From positions 103,354,001 to 103,418,000 of the forward strand of contig OX638150.1 in the NCBI GenBank assembly GCA_951804945.1: a DNA stretch of 64,000 nucleotides, given 5' to 3'. This document shows positions 4,641 through 50,579 of the stretch, piece after piece. How positions within the stretch are numbered: the stretch's first letter is position 1; every line of letters begins with the position of its first letter. A program made the translations under genes and the position numbers. The stretch comes from Podarcis cretensis. Lineage: Eukaryota. Below the pieces are notes generated by a model, which was given only the letters and a program-made list of their open reading frames with translations, had not been told where the DNA came from and did no database searches.

Positions 4641-6470
4641 CTGTTCTGAACATCATTAAGAAGTCATCCTGTCTTTCAGGAGGATCTGCTCAGCAGCCAT
4701 TTACTCTTCTGACATAGGAAGAAGGGGAGCAGGATGGACTGCCTTTTCTCCTTTCAGGACTCAGCTTGCCATATCATAGTGTGAATTACCTTCAGCTTGT
4801 CCATGTTGTGTAGGAGGAGCTTTATTTCAGTCAGAGTTCTTCCCACCTACCACTGAGACAAAGACTCGGAATCCCGTTGCTAATTGCAGTGGCACATTGT
4901 ACAGAGAGGCTGCCTCCCCTGCTCTTGGAGTCCAGCCATAGACTGAATGCTGGGATGAGGGACCTGGGGAAGTCCAGATGTCATTGGACTCCAGCTCCCA
5001 TTAGTCCCAGACAGCAAGGCCAGTAGGTATGGTAGTCCAAGAACTTTTGAAAGGCCACAGATTCCTCATCCCTGGTGCAATCACCATAAGCCAATGGTTG
5101 GAAGTCACTGCTTTAGCATATATAGGGTTTTCAGCCTTAGTTAATAACAAAGCTAACAATGTGACCTCCATTCAGTGTAAATTATTATCGGCAAATATTC
5201 GCTTCCCATTGGAGAGAATTGGAGAAAAGCTTTCAACTTTATCTGGAAGAGAAAGCAAGAGATGCATATGTCTCACGGAGCCTTCTGCTATCTTGCTTTG
5301 AATCATTAGGTCAAATTGTGTGGATGGAATCTCATTACCTCTCGCAGGCCAAGAAGTTCTATCACAACACAGAGTCTTTAGAATAGACCTTTTGACATGC
5401 CTGCCTGCAAATCAAGGTTGAAATATATGGCACTTTATTTAACCTAACCAGATGGCTCTATAAGAGATTGTAGATTTTTTTAAAAAAAATCATCATAGCA
5501 AAATGCTGCAGAGCACCTTTGAAATTGACTCGAGCCATACATAGAGATAAGCGTTGAAAGCAACAAAGAGTCCCTACAAATGCTGTATAAATATGCCTCT
5601 CTTTGTTTTATTTTATTATTGCTATTATTTCACTCATTCTGCAAAAGCTGCAAACCTTATCAAGATGAGTCGTCTTGCTTTTTGAAAGGTTTGCACAGCT
5701 TGGTAATTGTGGACAAAACTATGTAGGGGAAATTAATCGAAGCAAGGCAGCAACCCTAACACAATTTTCCAAAACACTGAATATGTAAGATAAATCTATT
5801 CTCGGAGATTAAATGCAGACAGTCACATGAGGTAAGGGATCAAAGCAACAGCACCTTTGGACTCATTGCTTGATGAGCTCCATGGTATTCAGCAACCACC
5901 CAGATATCAGTGCACTGAGGAATTTGATCAACAGAACTTGGCTCATCTGGAGCAAGGTCACGGTACACAGGTCAGCTACCACACGAGAAAGGGCAGCAGG
6001 ACAAGCATGTTAGCTCCACCCACATCCATTTTCATCAGCTGCCTTGAGTTGGAAGGTGACTTTCTGCAGCAGAGAGCCTCCTGTATCTATGTGTGCTTTC
6101 TGTGTGTTTTGGGGAACAGAGCAAGTAAAGCTAACATACTTGTTCTTGCTGGAGCCCCCTCACTCACACCTACATACAGGGCAACTTGCCTGTGTACATA
6201 ATGCCTGAATAGGGCTTGTGTGCCCTTTACAGGAAATCATTTAAGAAAAATGCATTATTTTCATTAATACTGCATTTTGATGCGATTTGATGTCATTGTT
6301 AAGAGTAATGACTACCACAGAAATAAATAAATATTTTTATAAAACAAAGAAGTTCAAACCCCCGGGGGGGGGGGATAGGCTGTAGGCCCTGAGAAAGAGA
6401 GCATCAGTACTCACCGAAAAAGCCTTTCTCATATTTCATCCACCAGATGGTGCCCAGAACTTTCCATATA

Positions 6471-30981: not shown

Positions 30982-31056
30982 CACCAGTATCACTCAAAAA
31001 TAGATGAACTAATTGAAGAAACCGTCAAGGAAATGATAACGCTCCTAGTTGCAAAG
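30982..31056 (+). CDS. CADPS: CADPS coding exon ([25 protein letters not shown])
   Basis: cttcttccccctccttag acceptor, AAG|gtaacc donor, 75 nt, phase 0-0; absent from ORF track. Confidence 0.96.
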
Positions 31057-41910: not shown

Positions 41911-41943
41911 GTGAAGGCAGCTTCCAAATACGTGGATGTGCCC
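41911..41943 (+). CDS. CADPS: CADPS 33-nt exon (VKAASKYVDVP)
   Basis: tttttctctttcag acceptor, CCC|gtaagc donor, phase 0-0; joins FT to KPGMDV; absent from ORF track. Confidence 0.95.
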
Positions 41944-44900
41944 GTAAGCACACAAAAATTACGATAATTTTTGCAATAGTTCCTGCTATGTATTTTTAGA
42001 AGAAGAAAAAATGGAGTTGCTTTTTCTTCCCCTTTAAATCCTGTCTTAGCTAATGGTGTACTATAGACTCCTGTTTACAAAAGTTTCTGAAAGCTGATTT
42101 ATCCTGAAAGTTTCCTGTTAATTTTACCCTATAGACATGCTTTCATTTATGATTCTCTGTCCCTTGCATCATATGCTGTTTATCATCCACCAATATGTAA
42201 AACAGGGCCCAGAGTCTAAATGTGGCCTCCAAGGGATGTCACTACAGCCACAGAACTTTTCTGAATTTGGGCACAACCTGCCATTAGCATGAAAAGGGTA
42301 ACTTCGCACTAACTCTGTAACAACAGCAGCGTTGGACCAAAGCTGCAGACTACCAACTACAAATTCCCTCTTTAAAATGTTGGCTCAGACTACAACTATA
42401 CCACTGTAAGTGGTAAGTGTGGGAAGGCCCTAAGATGAGTAGTAAACTATCTTTGGCGATCACTCATAGCTGAATAAGATTGTCTTCCATAAACACAGTT
42501 TTAACAATGAGTCCGTAGGTGACTGTGGAGGCCAATTCTGGATCCACACGTCCTTCCACAAGGACTTACTGGGCAGGAGGAGGCAACAGTCCCAGGAAAC
42601 GAAGGAAGATACTGTCGCGCATTTGAGTGGCATTGTGGGAAGTGGTTCCTGAGAGCTACCAGCATCTTGAAACAATGGCTTTGAAGAACAGGCTGCAAAG
42701 ATGGGGGTCTGTCGTAATTGTGGTACACAGGCAGTACAAGGTCTAAAATGAGGCCTGGCCAGAAGAGGGGGCTTGTGAGGCTGAAGAAGGGAGAGAGAGC
42801 AATAGTTCAGTTTGCTAGGCCTAGCAAGAGGGAAATTACCGGTAAAGCCAAAACAGAGGTCAGGAATGTACATTAGGAAATTTAAAAACTCATCATTCTT
42901 CCATTCTTTCTTGTTGTCTTTCCCAGGTGGCAAGCAACAATATAAGCAATAAAAATGTAACACAGCATTATTAATAAAGATTCTTAAAATTAAAAAATAC
43001 AAAATACAAAAAAATTCAAAAATGCCAAAGCAGTAAAATAGAAACCATTTCCAACCACAGCAATACAAAAATATAATGGCAGCATGTCCAGCAAACAGCT
43101 TGGCTAAAAACCATAAAAACTCCAGAAGGACTTTTACAGAGGCCCAAACTACCTTATTCAAAATCAGATAAACTGATGGGTCAGTTCTTACTAACATAAT
43201 TTAAGTGTAACCCAGATAGGCAGAAATGTTGAATTGGTGCTGTGTATACCAAAACCAGCCTTGAACATTTCTGCAAAATAACCACATTATATCATTCTTA
43301 TAAGGGCAGATAGTGCTGCTGCCTGCATCTCTCTATTCAGAGCTTGGATTATAATGAAGAGAACTCTTAAAGATCTCAGGCAAAGCACTCTGCTTGCCAG
43401 AAATTAACATTTAAATTAAGTTTAAGTGCAGTATATAAATGTTGGTGGGAGTCAAGGATTATGACTGATAAACAGGAGGCAATTGCAGACAGACTTTTTT
43501 TAAATGAGAATTTATAAACATGAATGACTACTTTTAACTTTACAAATATGGATCCATATGTAGAATTTGGAAGATAAAGATGTTTACATATTAGTACAGA
43601 GAAGCTATATGTGGTTTTGATCAGTAAACTGTTTTGCTTACTTCAGTATATATTTATGGAATTTACAGGCAGAGTTTAGAATTTATTCCTTTTTCTTTTC
43701 ACATTATGAAACATCATGACCGTTGTTTTGAAACCTTCCCACCCAAGTAGTCTAATCCACCAAATACCTGGTTACATAATATGTAGGTGCCTGGGGAGAG
43801 TTTTGCACAAATGGGAAGCCACCACAGAAAAGACCCCGTCTCATGCTGCTACCCTCCAGACTTCTCATGGCCCCTCTCCTGGAGGGAGCGCATGAAGAAG
43901 GGCGTCAGATTATGATTGCAGGGTATTAGGAAAATACCTGCCCCCCATGGCTCAGGAACCTTGACATCAGGTTCCGACAACACCTATAGATTTGATATCT
44001 GCTTTCAGCCATAGGGGATTGCCAATCTCTGGACCATTACAGCATCAGACGGTGTGATTGCAGAAACTACAGGTGGGACATAAAATCACAGAATTGTAAA
44101 GTTGGATGGGGTCCCAAGGCTCATCCAGTCCAACCCTCTGCAATGCAGAAGTCTCACCTAAAGAACCTCTGTATAAAACCTCCAGCCAGGCAGAGCAGGT
44201 AGGCATGTGGGAATGTTGGAGAAAGCAGCTGAGCATGGCAAGCTGGAATGAAAAGGGGATGTCAGAGCAGCTAAATGGAATACCCTCCTCAACTCCCTTC
44301 CTTGCAGAGGAAACCAAGAAGGGGAAAATAATGTAGGAAGAGACCCTATGGAGGCACCTTCCTTCTCGCCATCCCGGTCTCAGCACTTAGTGGGATCCTG
44401 AAGAGTGGGACAATACAGTATGTTCTACAAGGGGACTATTGCAATCTGATTTTCACAATGAAGTTGGTGCCTTCACTCCCTTTGTTCCCCTAACCCATCC
44501 AATAATCTCAATTGACTGGCAAATTCTTTCAGTGGTGGGGAAACTCCCCAAACCTGTGCAGTCAGGAGAGCTTTGAGGTTTTATCTCTAGGTAAAAGCTT
44601 AGCTCTCTTAGCATCAACCAGATAACAATTGCTGCATCTAATTCTGGAAATATGATTGTTTAGTACTGGAGAATTACAGCACTTTTTATTGCATCCTAAA
44701 GCTGGCACAATCCGCTTGCAGGAAATTGCTTGAAAAAATATAACCGCCACGTTTACATTGTCCTCATTGTTTTTTAAATTAATACCTTGTCATTGTTTCA
44801 GTAGGTGTTAAAAATGTTACTGGCAGCTCTGGGGCCAACCATTGGCCCTTTGCTTGATAATTGTATTTCTATTTTAATATATATATCTATAAACTACCTT

Positions 44901-46165
44901 CCCACTGCTTCTCAAACTGTCCTAATTTTCACCCTGGAAATTACAGAGAAGTGTTAACTAACTTCAATTTACAGTGGCTGACAATCACATCTCATACAGA
45001 AAATGATACTTTGTGATCTGCGGTAAATCACAGTAATACAAGTAATGACACCCATTACGAAGAAACTTCCAATGTGCCACAGACATTTAAGATTTGTGTG
45101 GCAGCTTTCATAATGACTCTTGTTTCAGCAGTTTAATGGGTTCCCTCTGAGATAAGTTCGATTCCAACATATGAAGGAGTGTGAACTTACTTAGTGATGA
45201 TTTTCTCCCAAATTATCTCCACGGCTTGCATCTTGTGAGGGAAACACAAACTGTGCCATGAGCATCACAGATACCGCAAGCTTTAGAAGTTCTGGTTTTG
45301 GGGAGACAGACTCCTCAGACAGGTTGGAGACTGAACAGAGGAGTCCTGTGCACGTTTACTTAGAAGTAAGTGCCACTGTGTCCCAGCAGACCCGGGATTG
45401 CAGCCTTAGTAGCTATTTAGCATTTAGGGCCCAATCCAGCAAAGGTTTCAACAAGGGAAAGTCTGCTAAACTTTTCCACTACAATCAATACACTGCTGAA
45501 GTATTTGTGCCCTTACCAGATGTATAGAAATAAAAGATAAAACTGCAAACTCTTTTTTATAATGTGTGGTTCTGAATGGCGTTTTAAAAAATATATATAC
45601 ATGTACCTATTTCAAATGCCTTAGGGGAAAGAGACTTAGTGCTGGGTGTTAGCCTTCTAACATTGTATAATAGGAGATTTGCGTACAGATAACGCAAGGG
45701 GTGGGGTGGGGGGCTGAACCCAGCAGGAGTTGTTGCTTTGCTAATTAGGTCAATAGTACCAAACATTGCAAGAGAGGACTTCCTGGCACCAAGAGCGTCA
45801 AGGGAAAGTCTATATCCATCTAAGCCGCTTCCCTCCAGGCGAAAGAGAAAGAGAGATAGTCTGTGCATACGGTGATCTTCTACGCTATGCAAGCTGCACT
45901 TAGTGTTGCTTCAGCTGCCTACCAAGCAAGAGCTGACACCCAAATATGTCACAGATACTCTGGTAGGAAAAGGAACCTCCGCCACAGTGTCAGGGAGAAT
46001 AGAGCGCATGGCGGCAAGGGACAGGCGGACAGGAAGGATCCTTACAAATGAATAAATAAGCTTTTCTTGGGAAGATGCCATTTTCATGCTGGGTGTTTTG
46101 TGTTTTTTTCCCCCACCCTCCTCCTCTCTCCTCTCCTCCCTGCCCCACTCCTTTCCTCTGTGCAG

Positions 46166-46273
46166 AAACCAGGGATGGATGTCGCTGACGCCTACGTGAC
46201 CTTCGTGCGCCATTCTCAGGACATCCTGCGTGATAAGGTCAATGAGGAGATGTATATAGAAAGGTTATTTGAT
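46166..46273 (+). CDS. CADPS: CADPS coding exon ([36 protein letters not shown]), containing the E>G editing codon
   Basis: cctctgtgcag acceptor, GAT|gtaagt donor, 108 nt, phase 0-0. Confidence 0.97.
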
Positions 46274-47613
46274 GTAAGTAAATGCCTTCTCCGCCTTGGG
46301 GGAATCCAAGGAGGAGAAACTGCAAAATGTGGCAAAATGAGACAGGAGGATAAGTCACATTTTGAGATTAAATGATTACTTTTAGATTTTTTTTATTTTA
46401 AGTTTCCTTTTCCTTCTGATTGAAATTCTCTCAGCTCTCTGTCTGCTCTAATGTTCTACTTGGATCCACTTTGTCCCAGTTTCTCTCTCTCTCTCTTTCT
46501 CTCTCTAGATTTTTTAGATAAAAGCATCTTATATCAACATGTATCATCTTGTATCCGAAATGTGTTAGGCTGCAATCCTATGCTCCCTTACCAGGGAGTG
46601 AGCCCTGTTGAACACAGAGGGGTTTACTTCTGAGTAGATATGTATAGGATTTGCACTGCAAGTCATTATTATCATCAAAAGTCCTGTTTTTAAAAGGTGG
46701 GGGGAGAAGAAGTCAGATAGGGTGCATGTGCAATTTGACTTGGAGATAGCATTGTTACTGAAATACCATTTTTTAATTAAATGGTGGGAGGGAATGACCT
46801 TTCCCTCCAGGAAATCTAAGCATGATTTAAACATTTAAAGAAAAAATGATAAGTCCGATTTTTGCATTATAGAATACAATTGTAATGCTTTAAAACCAGA
46901 ACTTTTAAAATCTGAAAACCTAGGTTTAAAACCTTGGAATAGGACGGCAGCTGTGGTGCCCGATAGCTCCCAAGTGTCAACTAAGATTGTATTTTGAATA
47001 GCATAGAGTGCATGTTCACAGACTTCTCTACCTTTCTGTTGCTTCTGCTGTGCAACACATTTTCTGCCCTAGCAATTGTGCAGTCTAGCATTGACGCTTG
47101 CAGCAGGTGCTTGACATTACTGTTTCAGTCACTTGTTTGGTTGGATCTCTGTTTATGTTGTTTTTGTGGCTGTAAAGCAGCTTCCTTTTTCTCCCTTTGC
47201 AACCTCTCAGCGCTTTCTCTCTCTCTCTCTCGCTCGTTCACTCGCTCTCATTTGTTTTGTGCTGTTTCTCTCCCCCACCTACCCAGTATTCTGGCATTTG
47301 GATGTGAATGCCTTCAGACCTACCAGCGCTTTATTGACGTGCTCCCTTGCTTGCATTGGGCAGGAAAAGCCTTTTCTCTCCCATCGTCACTGCCGCACCA
47401 CCCCATACAAGTTCCTCTCCTGCTTGATACCCATCTTCCCCCCACCACTCCACCCCATTTTTCTTTTCCCACTGAAGCCTCTTCCCTACTGCATAATTCT
47501 CTCCTTTCACCGCCACCCTTCTCCCCCCCCCCCCCATATTCTCCAAGATTAAAATGGAACTTATCTCTCATGTCAAATGTTTTATCACATTATATCAAGT
47601 GGCATGAATTGGA

Positions 47614-47668
47614 GTCAAATAATCTTCCTGTGTACATCTTCTAGCATGACCCATATCCACTGAGAATG
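47614..47668 (+). promoter_or_regulatory. Editing-complementary sequence (ECS) for the 46166-46273 exon
   Basis: 47614-47642 pairs with 46245-46273 at 28 of 29 positions (23 Watson-Crick, 5 G-U, one A.C); 47647-47651 pairs with 46237-46241; 47660-47668 pairs perfectly with 46211-46219. Confidence 0.85.
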
Positions 47669-48830
47669 CCTCATTCATGCATAAAGCACTCCAGAGACTC
47701 CTTTCCTCTTAAGAGAATTTCAAGCATTTAAAAAAAAAAATGTCAAATACAAATCACCTATCCACTTGGCAATGACAAAGAGGCAGTCATTTCCATTCTG
47801 TTACAGATCTACTAGCGCTCTGCCTGCCTATTGCTGAAATTCTTCCATTAGCAGTACATTTCCCCGGGACTGTTCTTTTCAGTGCCAACCTTTCCTTTGA
47901 GCAGTTTCCAGTTTTGTGCAGATCCCAGCAGACGGATAGTTGATCGGAATTGAATTTCAGTTCAATCGAAACCATGGTCTATATAAGGTCACATCTCTCT
48001 GCTTAAGCTAGATTTTAAAAGGTTTAGGCCTCTGTCTTTGCAGAGGAGCCAACGCACAGCGAGAATTCGTTTGGCTTAAACGTTGCATTGGCATCCCCCC
48101 AGGAAGCACACCGCTATAAGCAAGATGAACTCCATTACAAGGCCACAGATAAACACTGTGTTCAAAACTGGGTTAAATTTGCAACATGCTCCCAATTTGG
48201 AACACAGCTCCAAAGAATATAAACTTAAGTTCCAGTGTAAGCACTAAAAACCATGCCTAGGGCACTCATTTTCTACTGCTTTCCACTGTCGCCCAACAGT
48301 TTGCATACTCAAGCCATTATTTTCTTTTCGATCTGGAAAAATTCAGATTAAAAACATTCTTTTTAATCTGGAAACATTCTGCAAAAGAGGAGGGGGCCCC
48401 TGCACCTTAAAGAGTCATGCTGAAGAGAGATGCCGCTTGCATAGCTATTCTGAAATTCCCTATTAAAAGTGAAGGAGCCCCACACACATACACACTTTTA
48501 ACCAGGCTGCTCTATTAACATCCTGCAGTTGTGTGGCTTCCTCTTGGTGCACTTTGAGCCTTCGTGAGCATTTCTGAGCTGTTAAAGATACAGAAGCCTA
48601 CTCTTCCTTTTATCTTGTCACCCTAGAGCAAGACCGGTGGGGAAGCTGTAGACCTGGACTACAGCTCTCATTCAGCCCTGACTATTGGCCATACTTCCTG
48701 GGGCTGTTGGGAGTTGGAGTCAAACAACATCTAGAGAGCCGTAGGTTCCTCACCCCTTCTGTAAAACATGGATGGAGATCCTGTTGTCCTCCAGTTGTTG
48801 TTGTTGTTGTTGTTGTTGTTGGGATACAAC

Positions 48831-48966
48831 TCCCATCAACCCTGACTCATTCGTCATGGTGCCAGGGGCTGATGGGAGTTGGGAGTCTCAACAACATCCC
48901 GTCAACCCTGACTCATTCGTCATGGTGCCAGGGGCTGGTGGGAGTTGGGAGTCTCAACAACATCCC
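48831..48966. repeat. 66-bp tandem duplication (2 copies, 2 mismatches) inside a MITE remnant
   Basis: 48831-48896 vs 48897-48962, seen directly. Confidence 0.9.
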
Positions 48967-49421: not shown

Positions 49422-50579
49422 TAATGCAAAAGAGGATAGGGCTCTTTCTAGCAGAAGAGGAAAAATTAAGAGGAGCAGCTATACCTGCTGAAATTCCCTC
49501 TTCTACCCATGTATTAAAAGTGCAGGAGCTCTGTCTCCTTTTTCACAAAGCTGCCTACTTTCAGTGAATCTCAACAACAATGAAATACATCTTTGGCTTC
49601 AATCCTGTTGATATTTCCCTGAGAGTAAGCCCACCTGAACATAGCAGGGCTTACTTTCTGATTAAACATGCATAGAATTGGGGTGTTAATAAAATCACCC
49701 TCTATGTTGTGTTTTATTTCTGAAGGTGGTGTTCACATTGGATTCCTCCTTGCCTTTGTCACATATTCTCCACTTTTTATTTAAAAAAATTAAGTTATTA
49801 ATATTATTGGCAACACATTTTCAAAAGGCTAATTTTGCTGTTTCTTTTGTTCCCGAGGCCATTCATTTTACACTGCTTTAGTGTTCATTACCTCCCCAGT
49901 TCCTCTTCCCCATGTGAGCCGTGATAGCAGAATTATTCTCCCTGGTGGATATTGGGGTATGCAGGAGATTATCTGAATATTACTGTGTGGTCTACATTTT
50001 AATCGCCTTTATTCTGTAAATTAGTCGGGTTTACTGTGGAATAAAGTCATCATTGTCATTTTAAAAATCTTCTCTTCAGGTCACTGGGGAAAGAAACAGA
50101 TTGGCTAGTAAGTTAGTCTGACAATCAGCAGCTAACAAGGCTATTTTCTCCTCCAGGAGTTATTTACTGAAATTTCACATGACTTCTTTGTCCCATTGTA
50201 CTAAACGGGTGGCCAGAAGGCCAGTAGTTATGAGAAAGAAACACAATAGTGTTATTGTGCATTTGTGTTTTCTCGGCTAGAGGTGTGTGGTTTATCTGCA
50301 TGTCCATTCTAAAACTCTGATTTGAGGTTGTATGGCCAGTTTACATCTCTTGGGTTTTTGAGAGGTGATTTTAGCATCTCTTGTAATTTAGAAACAGTAG
50401 CATTGTGTTACCTGTCCCAGGTGGAGTCCTGTGGTGTTGTTTAAATGATAAGAGAGTTGTGATTGTGTATGGCTAGGGTTTGCTTGGGAATTTGGGGTGC
50501 AGGGTAACGTTCCCATGGGTCTGTAGCCAGGAGTGCTTTTTATCTGCTCATGCTGATACTCCAGCCGTGACTGCTTTGG

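What the first reader, a model, noticed from the sequence alone, without database searches (positions are those of the whole stretch)
46211..47668. Long-range exon-intron duplex: editing-complementary sequence for the CAPS1 E>G recoding site
Seen: intronic 47614-47642 (gtcaaataatcttcctgtgtacatcttct), about 1.34 kb downstream, pairs with exon 46245-46273 at 28 of 29 positions (23 WC, 5 G-U). Further helices form at 47647-47651/46237-46241 and, perfectly, ctgagaatg 47660-47668 with cattctcag 46211-46219. Five of the six departures from perfect complementarity in the main helix are G-U tolerant, which is the signature of selection on an RNA helix. Known: mammalian CAPS1 mRNA is A-to-I recoded Glu(GAG)>Gly (human E1250G), which alters dense-core vesicle release. 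Back-counting from the recalled human C-terminus places this at the first E of NEEMY, i.e. A46245. Here that A sits at the helix end with its 5' G opposite an A (47643). Inference: the editing structure is conserved in a squamate.
Basis: partly seen in the sequence, partly recalled or inferred. Interest (0 to 1): 0.85.

Follow-up and report, generated by a model that had tools for sequence, protein, structure and literature searches.

The report
Lizard CAPS1 RNA-editing hairpin, conserved
A stretch of intron 1.3 kb downstream folds back onto the end of a CAPS1 (CADPS) exon. It forms the double-stranded RNA that in mouse is known to direct A-to-I editing of a glutamate codon, so the finding is real and correctly read, but it is the lizard copy of a known vertebrate element.

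Summary
Exon bases 46245-46273 pair with intron bases 47614-47642 at 28 of 29 positions (23 Watson-Crick, 5 G-U). The two smaller helices are also present. The duplex is the best partner of this exon in the whole window and survives a global fold of the 1.57 kb span.

The exon (46166-46273) is the CADPS/CAPS1 exon encoding VNEEMYIER.

- About 90-100 base pairs join 46211-46365 to 47549-47668.
- A local hairpin at 46287-46318 sits between the paired parts.
- The 5' splice site lies inside the duplex.

The intronic arm is a sharply bounded 135-nt island (47547-47681). It is 97.8% identical, without gaps, to a distantly related bird-like amniote locus, while the flanks do not align. Synonymous changes vanish in the paired third of the exon.

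In mouse, the same exon-intron hairpin, about 1.5 kb apart, was proven by disruptive and compensatory mutations, and editing is reported from human to zebrafish. This is therefore an orthologue of a known element.

Two things could not be tested. Direct comparison with the mammalian ECS was not possible.

The parts
46166..46273 (+). CADPS/CAPS1 coding exon (108 nt, phase 0; the mouse exon 27 equivalent). Acceptor AG at 46164-46165, donor GT at 46274-46275.
   Evidence: Sequence and ORF translation. 94 vertebrate ORF relatives, including CADPS1-like proteins with PF06292. Alignment A1.
46245..46245 (+). Predicted A-to-I recoding site: the middle A of the first GAG of N-E-E-M-Y (Glu>Gly). It pairs with U47642 at the 5' end of the main helix. 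Its 5' neighbour G46244 faces A47643.
   Evidence: for the pairing. for the peptides [18 protein letters not shown]. for the G:A pair next to a 5'-GA site enhancing ADAR activity. Editing itself was not observed here.
46245..46273 (+). Exonic arm of the main helix.
   Evidence: 28/29 paired with 47614-47642. Identical in the bird-like locus and, except for A46250G (Met>Val, still pairs as G-U), in a teleost.
47614..47642 (+). Intronic arm of the main helix (the core editing complementary sequence).
   Evidence: The orthologous arm in L001 at 5261-5289 pairs 27/29 in the same register.
46227..46241 (+). Exonic partners of the distal ECS, 5' of the edited A. 46237-46241 pairs with 47647-47651. 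46232-46235 pairs with 47654-47657, or alternatively 46227-46233 pairs with 47675-47681.
   Evidence: The exon has no synonymous change from 46229 onward.
46211..46219 (+).
   Evidence: Perfect in the lizard and present in the global MFE. One uncompensated mismatch in the bird-like locus (T46213C, a synonymous His codon change). This is the weakest part.
46274..46286 (+). 5' splice site and first intron bases. 46277-46279 and 46282-46286 pair with 47608-47610 and 47601-47605 (helix B).
   Evidence: Invariant in lizard and bird-like; the teleost has a 1-nt insertion after 46281 and G for U at 46287.
46287..46318 (+). Local stem-loop that branches off between helix B and helix C, making a three-way junction.
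   Evidence: It folds as a hairpin in the lizard (-20.3 kcal/mol), the bird-like locus (-15.2) and the teleost (-12.5), although loop and stem sequence differ.
46319..46365 (+). Proximal-intron arm of helix C (an intron-intron extension of the duplex).
   Evidence: It pairs with 47549-47600 in about 38 bp broken by small bulges. It is conserved in the bird-like locus and the teleost. Spurious-ORF read-through shows the same stretch in mammalian-type ORFs. Two G-U to A-U changes in the bird-like locus keep pairing.
47547..47681 (+). Ultraconserved intronic island: the complete 3' arm (helix C partner, helix B partner, core ECS, distal ECS).
   Evidence: 135 nt, 97.8% identical and ungapped to L001 5194-5328. 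132/135 identical, against 11/27 and 13/29 in the flanks. The island edges coincide with the duplex edges.

Best explanation
In the CADPS pre-mRNA of this squamate, a 135-nt intronic island (47547-47681) folds back over a 1.34 kb loop. It pairs with the last third of the exon and the first ~90 nt of the same intron. The result is an imperfect double-stranded RNA of about 90-100 bp, interrupted by a small branch hairpin.

This is the orthologue of the exon 27/intron 27 hairpin that in mouse recruits ADAR1 or ADAR2 to deaminate the first Glu codon of NEEMY (E>G). Here the target is A46245. It sits at the 5' end of a 29-bp helix, paired to U47642, and its disfavoured 5' G faces an A.

Because the duplex contains the 5' splice site, editing has to happen on the unspliced transcript.

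Shown here: the pairing, its stability beyond chance, its retention in a global fold, the extreme conservation of both arms and the identity of the exon and codon.

Inferred: that ADAR edits A46245 in lizard tissue, and that the intron-intron extension boosts recruitment.
For: - Pairing and statistics.
- Global MFE keeps 100 arm-arm pairs in the lizard and 87 in the bird-like locus, with the same architecture.
- Island conservation: 97.8% over 135 ungapped nt, with unalignable flanks. The exon block is only 80% identical.
- Synonymous changes occur in 13 of the first 21 codons and in 0 of the last 15, which are the paired ones. Fisher p = 9e-5 across lizard, bird-like and teleost.
- Of 92 pairs, 87 are identical in the bird-like locus and 2 change G-U to A-U.
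- Literature: the mouse hairpin lies about 1.5 kb downstream and was validated by disruptive and compensatory mutations, with editing in human, mouse, rat and zebrafish. The edited residue is the first E. The site belongs to the 59-site conserved mammalian set. A G:A pair next to a 5'-GA site accelerates ADAR1 and ADAR2.
- No Rfam family covers either arm.
Against:
- No pair with compensating changes on both sides. The arms are too conserved to covary, and only one other species supplied the intronic arm.
- Three pairs are broken in the bird-like locus, including G46247-U47640, two pairs from the site.
- Orthology to the mouse ECS rests on exon identity, side and distance. It does not rest on a sequence alignment with a mammal.
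- The taxon of the comparison locus (L001/L002, JGI metagenome contigs) is not established. It is called bird-like only from the class of its intron read-through ORF.
Confidence: 0.85

Rival explanations
1. The conserved duplex exists mainly to regulate splicing. It would act by sequestering the 5' splice site and the exon end, slowing or gating removal of a >17.7 kb intron. Editing would be a by-product or absent in lizards.
For: The 5' splice site (46274-46279) lies between the main helix and helix B. The conserved structure (about 90-100 bp plus a branch hairpin) is far larger than a minimal ADAR site. Editing levels in mouse are only about 10-25%.
Against: In mouse the same hairpin was shown to be necessary for editing by mutation and rescue. 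The edited codon and its G-opposite-A neighbour are preserved exactly. The two roles are not exclusive.
Confidence: 0.08
2. The structure is conserved by descent, but A46245 is not edited, or only negligibly, in this squamate. Possible reasons are ADAR expression, kinetics or lineage-specific pairing changes.
For: No RNA data were obtainable. Editing has been reported for mammals and zebrafish only. I found no paper reporting it for reptiles or birds.
Against: 97.8% identity of a 135-nt intronic island across deep amniote divergence implies continuing selection in sauropsids. Synonymous constraint on the exon arm points the same way.
Confidence: 0.06
3. The island 47547-47681 is a DNA-level conserved non-coding element (for example an enhancer), and its complementarity to the exon is coincidental.
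For: The introns of this gene hold other conserved non-coding blocks without obvious RNA pairing, such as 44704-45187.
Against: The complementarity is about 10 sd beyond shuffles. The island borders coincide with the duplex borders. The exon arm shows synonymous constraint exactly where it pairs. The mouse experiments also argue against it.
Confidence: 0.01

Closest known systems
Mouse/human CAPS1 (CADPS) E/G editing hairpin: exon 27 paired with an intron 27 ECS about 1.5 kb downstream (Miyake et al. 2016, cited but not held in the library; Ulbricht et al., bioRxiv 10.1101/178202)
   Same: Same gene, same exon and same codon (first Glu of VNEEMYIER). The intronic partner is on the same side and at a similar distance (1340 nt here, 1152 nt in the bird-like locus, about 1.5 kb in mouse). 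The inverted repeat is imperfect in both.
   Different: The species is a squamate, for which I found no report. I could not align the lizard island to the mammalian ECS, so identity of the element is inferred. The papers call the mouse structure a small hairpin. Here the conserved pairing extends about 90 nt into the intron, with a branch hairpin, and the 3' arm is a 135-nt ultraconserved island.
GRIA2 Q/R and R/G sites: the classic exon-intron ECS duplexes of ADAR2 recoding targets
   Same: An exonic target adenosine is paired with an intronic complementary sequence. Editing is obligatorily pre-splicing. The intronic ECS is strongly conserved, and synonymous sites in the exon arm are constrained.
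   Different: The GRIA2 ECSs lie close to the exon (tens to a few hundred nt) and those sites are edited to high levels. The CAPS1 ECS is more than 1 kb away, the site is a disfavoured 5'-GA context, and editing in mouse is only about 10-25%. The GRIA2 details are from general knowledge and were not tested here.
Long-range intronic duplex / editing inducer element of Gabra3 (Daniel et al., NAR 2011, PMC3141254, seen)
   Same: A second, longer duplex adjacent to the editing helix, separated by loops, could recruit ADAR and raise editing at the specific site. Helix C (46319-46365 x 47549-47600) has that layout.
   Different: In Gabra3 the inducer is a separate intronic hairpin. Here the extension is continuous with the same two strands. 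Its effect on editing is untested.

Membership tests
CAPS1/CADPS E>G editing hairpin (exon-intron ECS duplex) | The host exon is the CADPS exon encoding ...[14 protein letters not shown]. | tested here: met
   Translation of 46166-46273. Relatives are named CADPS1-like and carry PF06292. The upstream CADPS exons lie in the same order and strand.
CAPS1/CADPS E>G editing hairpin (exon-intron ECS duplex) | A genomic A at the middle position of the first Glu codon (GAG) of NEEMY. | tested here: met
   GAG at 46244-46246. The edited peptide VNGEMYIER versus the genomic VNEEMYIER comes from 10.1101/2022.11.10.515815.
CAPS1/CADPS E>G editing hairpin (exon-intron ECS duplex) | An imperfect inverted repeat between the exon and the downstream intron, about 1.5 kb away, that includes the site. 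| tested here: met
   28/29 pairs with a 1340-nt loop. Kept in the global MFE. z about -10 against shuffles.
CAPS1/CADPS E>G editing hairpin (exon-intron ECS duplex) | The intronic arm is conserved across species. | tested here: met
   132/135 identical to a distant amniote locus with unalignable flanks. This rests on only one other species.
CAPS1/CADPS E>G editing hairpin (exon-intron ECS duplex) | The intronic arm is homologous in sequence to the validated mouse or human ECS. | not testable with these tools
Mammalian-type contigs were deliberately not sought because they could be human. The figures of the papers are not held.
CAPS1/CADPS E>G editing hairpin (exon-intron ECS duplex) | A-to-I conversion is observed in RNA (A/G mixture in cDNA, A in DNA). 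| not testable with these tools
A teleost cDNA contig (L003) reads the unedited codon, which is uninformative.
CAPS1/CADPS E>G editing hairpin (exon-intron ECS duplex) | Editing depends on the duplex (lost on disruption, restored by compensation) and on ADAR1 or ADAR2. | not testable with these tools
   This needs an experiment. It has been done for mouse only.
Structure supported by covariation | Base pairs maintained through changes on both sides. | tested here: not met
   Of 92 pairs compared with the bird-like locus, 87 were identical, 2 were one-sided G-U to A-U changes, 3 were broken and 0 were doubly compensated. The conservation is too high to be informative.

The most novel reading that the evidence does not exclude
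The conserved element is not just a minimal ECS. It is a roughly 100-bp three-way-junction RNA that is ultraconserved across amniotes and whose proximal-intron arm is recognisable from teleosts to mammals. The intron-intron extension (helix C) and the branch hairpin would act as a built-in ADAR recruitment or editing-inducer module. That module would also couple editing to use of the sequestered 5' splice site.

A side possibility is that the lizard-specific A-C mismatch at A46260/C47627 marks a second, lineage-specific Glu>Gly site.
Probability: 0.2. Interest if true: 0.5.

Novelty: new member of a known kind. Interest (0 to 1): 0.3.

Why it matters
CAPS1 E>G editing tunes dense-core and synaptic vesicle release in mouse. 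Finding the complete editing structure almost unchanged in a squamate and in a second sauropsid-type genome suggests the recoding switch has been kept across amniotes. It also predicts a specific editable base, A46245, that a single brain RNA-seq run can check.

The sharply bounded 135-nt island and the extended pairing define the full cis element more precisely than a 29-bp helix does. That is useful for designing ECS-deletion or minigene experiments. It does not change what is known about how such sites work.

Tried and rejected
- Protein search with the ORF that reads through the ECS (47432-47641): one candidate and no hit. Breadth of ECS conservation could therefore not be widened that way. 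I judged search of protein representatives on the same ORF equally unpromising and did not run it.
- Counting back from the lizard C-terminus to fix the edited residue: the downstream CADPS exons are not in the window, because the intron is longer than 17.7 kb. The residue was fixed from published peptides instead.
- Miyake et al. 2016: not held under DOI, PMC id or PubMed id.
- Teleost genomic contig L004: it has the exon and the conserved proximal intron but no ECS within its 1141 nt of downstream sequence. The fish ECS was therefore not located.
- Rfam: no family at either arm, so a snoRNA or miRNA explanation for the island is rejected.
- Earlier scan notes: none for this place.
- No mammalian-type or possibly human contig was fetched, saved or compared.

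Full report
**What is there**

Bases 46245-46273 pair antiparallel with 47614-47642 at 28 of 29 positions: 23 Watson-Crick, 5 G-U and one mismatch (A46260 opposite C47627). 46237-46241 pairs perfectly with 47647-47651, and 46211-46219 pairs perfectly with 47660-47668. G46244 faces A47643. The inverted-repeat tool ranks the main helix first in 46100-47800 and also finds pieces of the other helices.

**Is it more than chance?**

- Across the 64 kb window, a 28/29 pairing of any 29-mer of the exon occurs only here. The next independent score is 24. Thirty local shuffles gave maxima of 23-27.
- Duplex energy of the exon segment against 1273 tiles of the window puts this site first: -62.8 kcal/mol, against a mean of -31.9 (sd 5.8) and a runner-up of -52.2.
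- Cofolding the extended arms (46200-46370 with 47545-47685) gives -118.6 kcal/mol. Dinucleotide shuffles of the intronic arm give -82.1 +/- 3.6, so z is about -10.
- When the whole 1571-nt stretch 46140-47710 is folded as one molecule, the long-range interaction survives competition from 1.3 kb of intervening intron.

**The gene and the site**

The exon is 46166-46273 (acceptor AG at 46164-5, donor GT at 46274-5, 36 codons) and encodes [36 protein letters not shown].

A protein search with the read-through ORF found 94 vertebrate ORF clusters. They include a Phrynosoma platyrhinos ORF (82% identical, including the translated intron start), a Lates japonicus 'calcium-dependent secretion activator 1-like protein' and a bullfrog protein; the last two carry PF06292. 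Upstream CADPS exons lie in order on the same strand near 31000, 32868 and 41911. The downstream exons are outside the window.

The edited residue was fixed from the literature rather than from memory. A proteogenomic study synthesised VNEEMYIER and VNGEMYIER as the genomic and recoded CADPS peptides for human E1250G / mouse E1252G (10.1101/2022.11.10.515815).

**The structure is larger than reported**

Cofolding and global folding show the following, moving away from the main helix:
- Helix B: 46277-46279 and 46282-46286 pair with 47608-47610 and 47601-47605.
- A local branch hairpin at 46287-46318.
- Helix C: about 38 bp, intron with intron, between 46319-46365 and 47549-47600.

The 5' splice site therefore sits inside the duplex, in a small internal loop between the main helix and helix B.

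On the 5' side of the edited A there are short helices with two alternatives. The other is 46227-46233 x 47675-47681.

**Conservation**

A scan of JGI metagenome contigs with the exon alignment returned four loci:
- L001 and L002, which are 99.8% identical to each other. They are genomic, and their read-through ORF is of the class I take to be avian. It is not the mammalian class, and the taxon is not established.
- L003, a spliced teleost cDNA.
- L004, a 1.7 kb teleost genomic contig.

In L001 the last 29 exon bases pair 27/29 with a site 1152 nt downstream, in the same register.

BLASTN of lizard against L001 shows the intron as unalignable except for islands. The strongest island is 47547-47681 = L001 5194-5328: 135 nt, 97.8% identical and ungapped. 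The block around the exon is only 80% identical. In the alignment the island is 132/135 identical, and the adjacent flanks are 11/27 and 13/29. The borders of the island are the borders of the predicted duplex.

On the other arm, lizard, the bird-like locus and the teleost are nearly invariant from 46227 to about 46365. Within the exon, 13 of the first 21 codons differ synonymously among the three. None of the last 15 codons, which are the paired ones, does (Fisher p = 9e-5). The single difference in that stretch is A46250G in the teleost (Met>Val), which would still pair as G-U.

The branch hairpin folds in all three lineages despite sequence differences. The read-through ORFs of mammalian type contain the translated helix C arm, so that arm is probably conserved in mammals too.

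**Covariation**

Of 92 pairs compared with the bird-like locus, 87 are identical, two change G-U to A-U and three are broken. None is compensated on both sides. The case for structure therefore rests on complementarity, thermodynamics, coincident conservation of both arms and synonymous constraint, not on covariation.

**What it most likely does**

Ulbricht et al. (bioRxiv 10.1101/178202) report several relevant results:
- Mouse CAPS1 exon 27 pairs with a sequence about 1.5 kb downstream in intron 27.
- Intronic mutations that open the duplex abolish editing by both ADAR1 and ADAR2 in a minigene.
- Compensatory exonic mutations restore that editing.
- The site is edited in human, mouse, rat and zebrafish.

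The site also belongs to the 59-site set conserved across mammals (PMC4053846).

The lizard structure has the same exon, codon, orientation and approximate loop size, so I read it as the orthologous editing hairpin. The target is a disfavoured 5'-GA context. The G opposite A at 46244/47643, conserved in the bird-like locus, matches a configuration shown to accelerate ADAR1 and ADAR2 at 5'-GA sites (PMC9638939). Whether that is its role here is inference.

Because the splice donor is inside the duplex, editing must precede splicing. A role in splicing kinetics is a reasonable secondary function. No Rfam family covers either arm.

**What could not be done**

- No mammalian DNA was compared, and contigs that might be human were deliberately not sought.
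- Miyake et al. 2016 is not held.
- An ORF-based search for the ECS in other species was blank.

**Verdict**

The element is an orthologue of a known, experimentally validated ADAR substrate, so its novelty is low. The modest additions are its documentation in a squamate, the full extent of the conserved three-way structure, and the sharply bounded ultraconserved 135-nt intronic arm.

Noticed in passing
window 44704-45187: A conserved non-coding block in the upstream intron. It is 80.8% identical over 495 nt to the bird-like locus L001 2721-3202, has no open frame on either strand and is rich in TAAT-type motifs. It is probably an intronic regulatory element unrelated to the editing hairpin.
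   Followed up: partly
window 48813-48897: A near-perfect palindromic hairpin (MFE -47 kcal/mol, z -5.0). It matches the mir-5408 model on both strands, but far below the gathering score (36.6 and 32.6 bits against 90). It looks like a repeat- or transposon-derived hairpin rather than a confirmed miRNA.
   Followed up: partly
window 46260 / 47627: The only non-pairing position of the main helix is an A opposite C (GAA codon of the Glu in IERLF), a geometry ADARs like. In the bird-like locus it is A opposite A. It is a possible lizard-specific extra editing site and is untested.
   Followed up: no
window 43330-43444 and 49948-50032: Two further short intronic blocks are conserved with the bird-like locus (75% over 115 nt and 79% over 86 nt).
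   Followed up: no
window 46848-46876 versus 47537-47565: A second, weaker inverted repeat (72% over 29 nt). A mid-intron copy of the GATAAGTC..ATTTT motif could compete with 46349-46365 for the 5' end of the island. It did not align in the BLASTN comparison with the bird-like locus.
   Followed up: no
window ~31000, ~32868, 41911-41943: Upstream CADPS exons lie on the + strand, including the 11-codon microexon VKAASKYVDVP. The intron after 46273 is longer than 17.7 kb, because the next exon is not in the window.
   Followed up: partly
L003 (JGI contig Ga0314697_10006789) and L001/L002: Vertebrate CADPS sequences sit in JGI metagenome and metatranscriptome collections as host or contaminant contigs. 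L003 is a spliced teleost cDNA that reads the unedited GAG at the site.
   Followed up: partly
window 47180-47540: A CT-rich, low-complexity tract with poly-C fills the intron just upstream of the conserved island. It creates a spurious 216-aa ORF (46994-47644) that ends inside the ECS.
   Followed up: no
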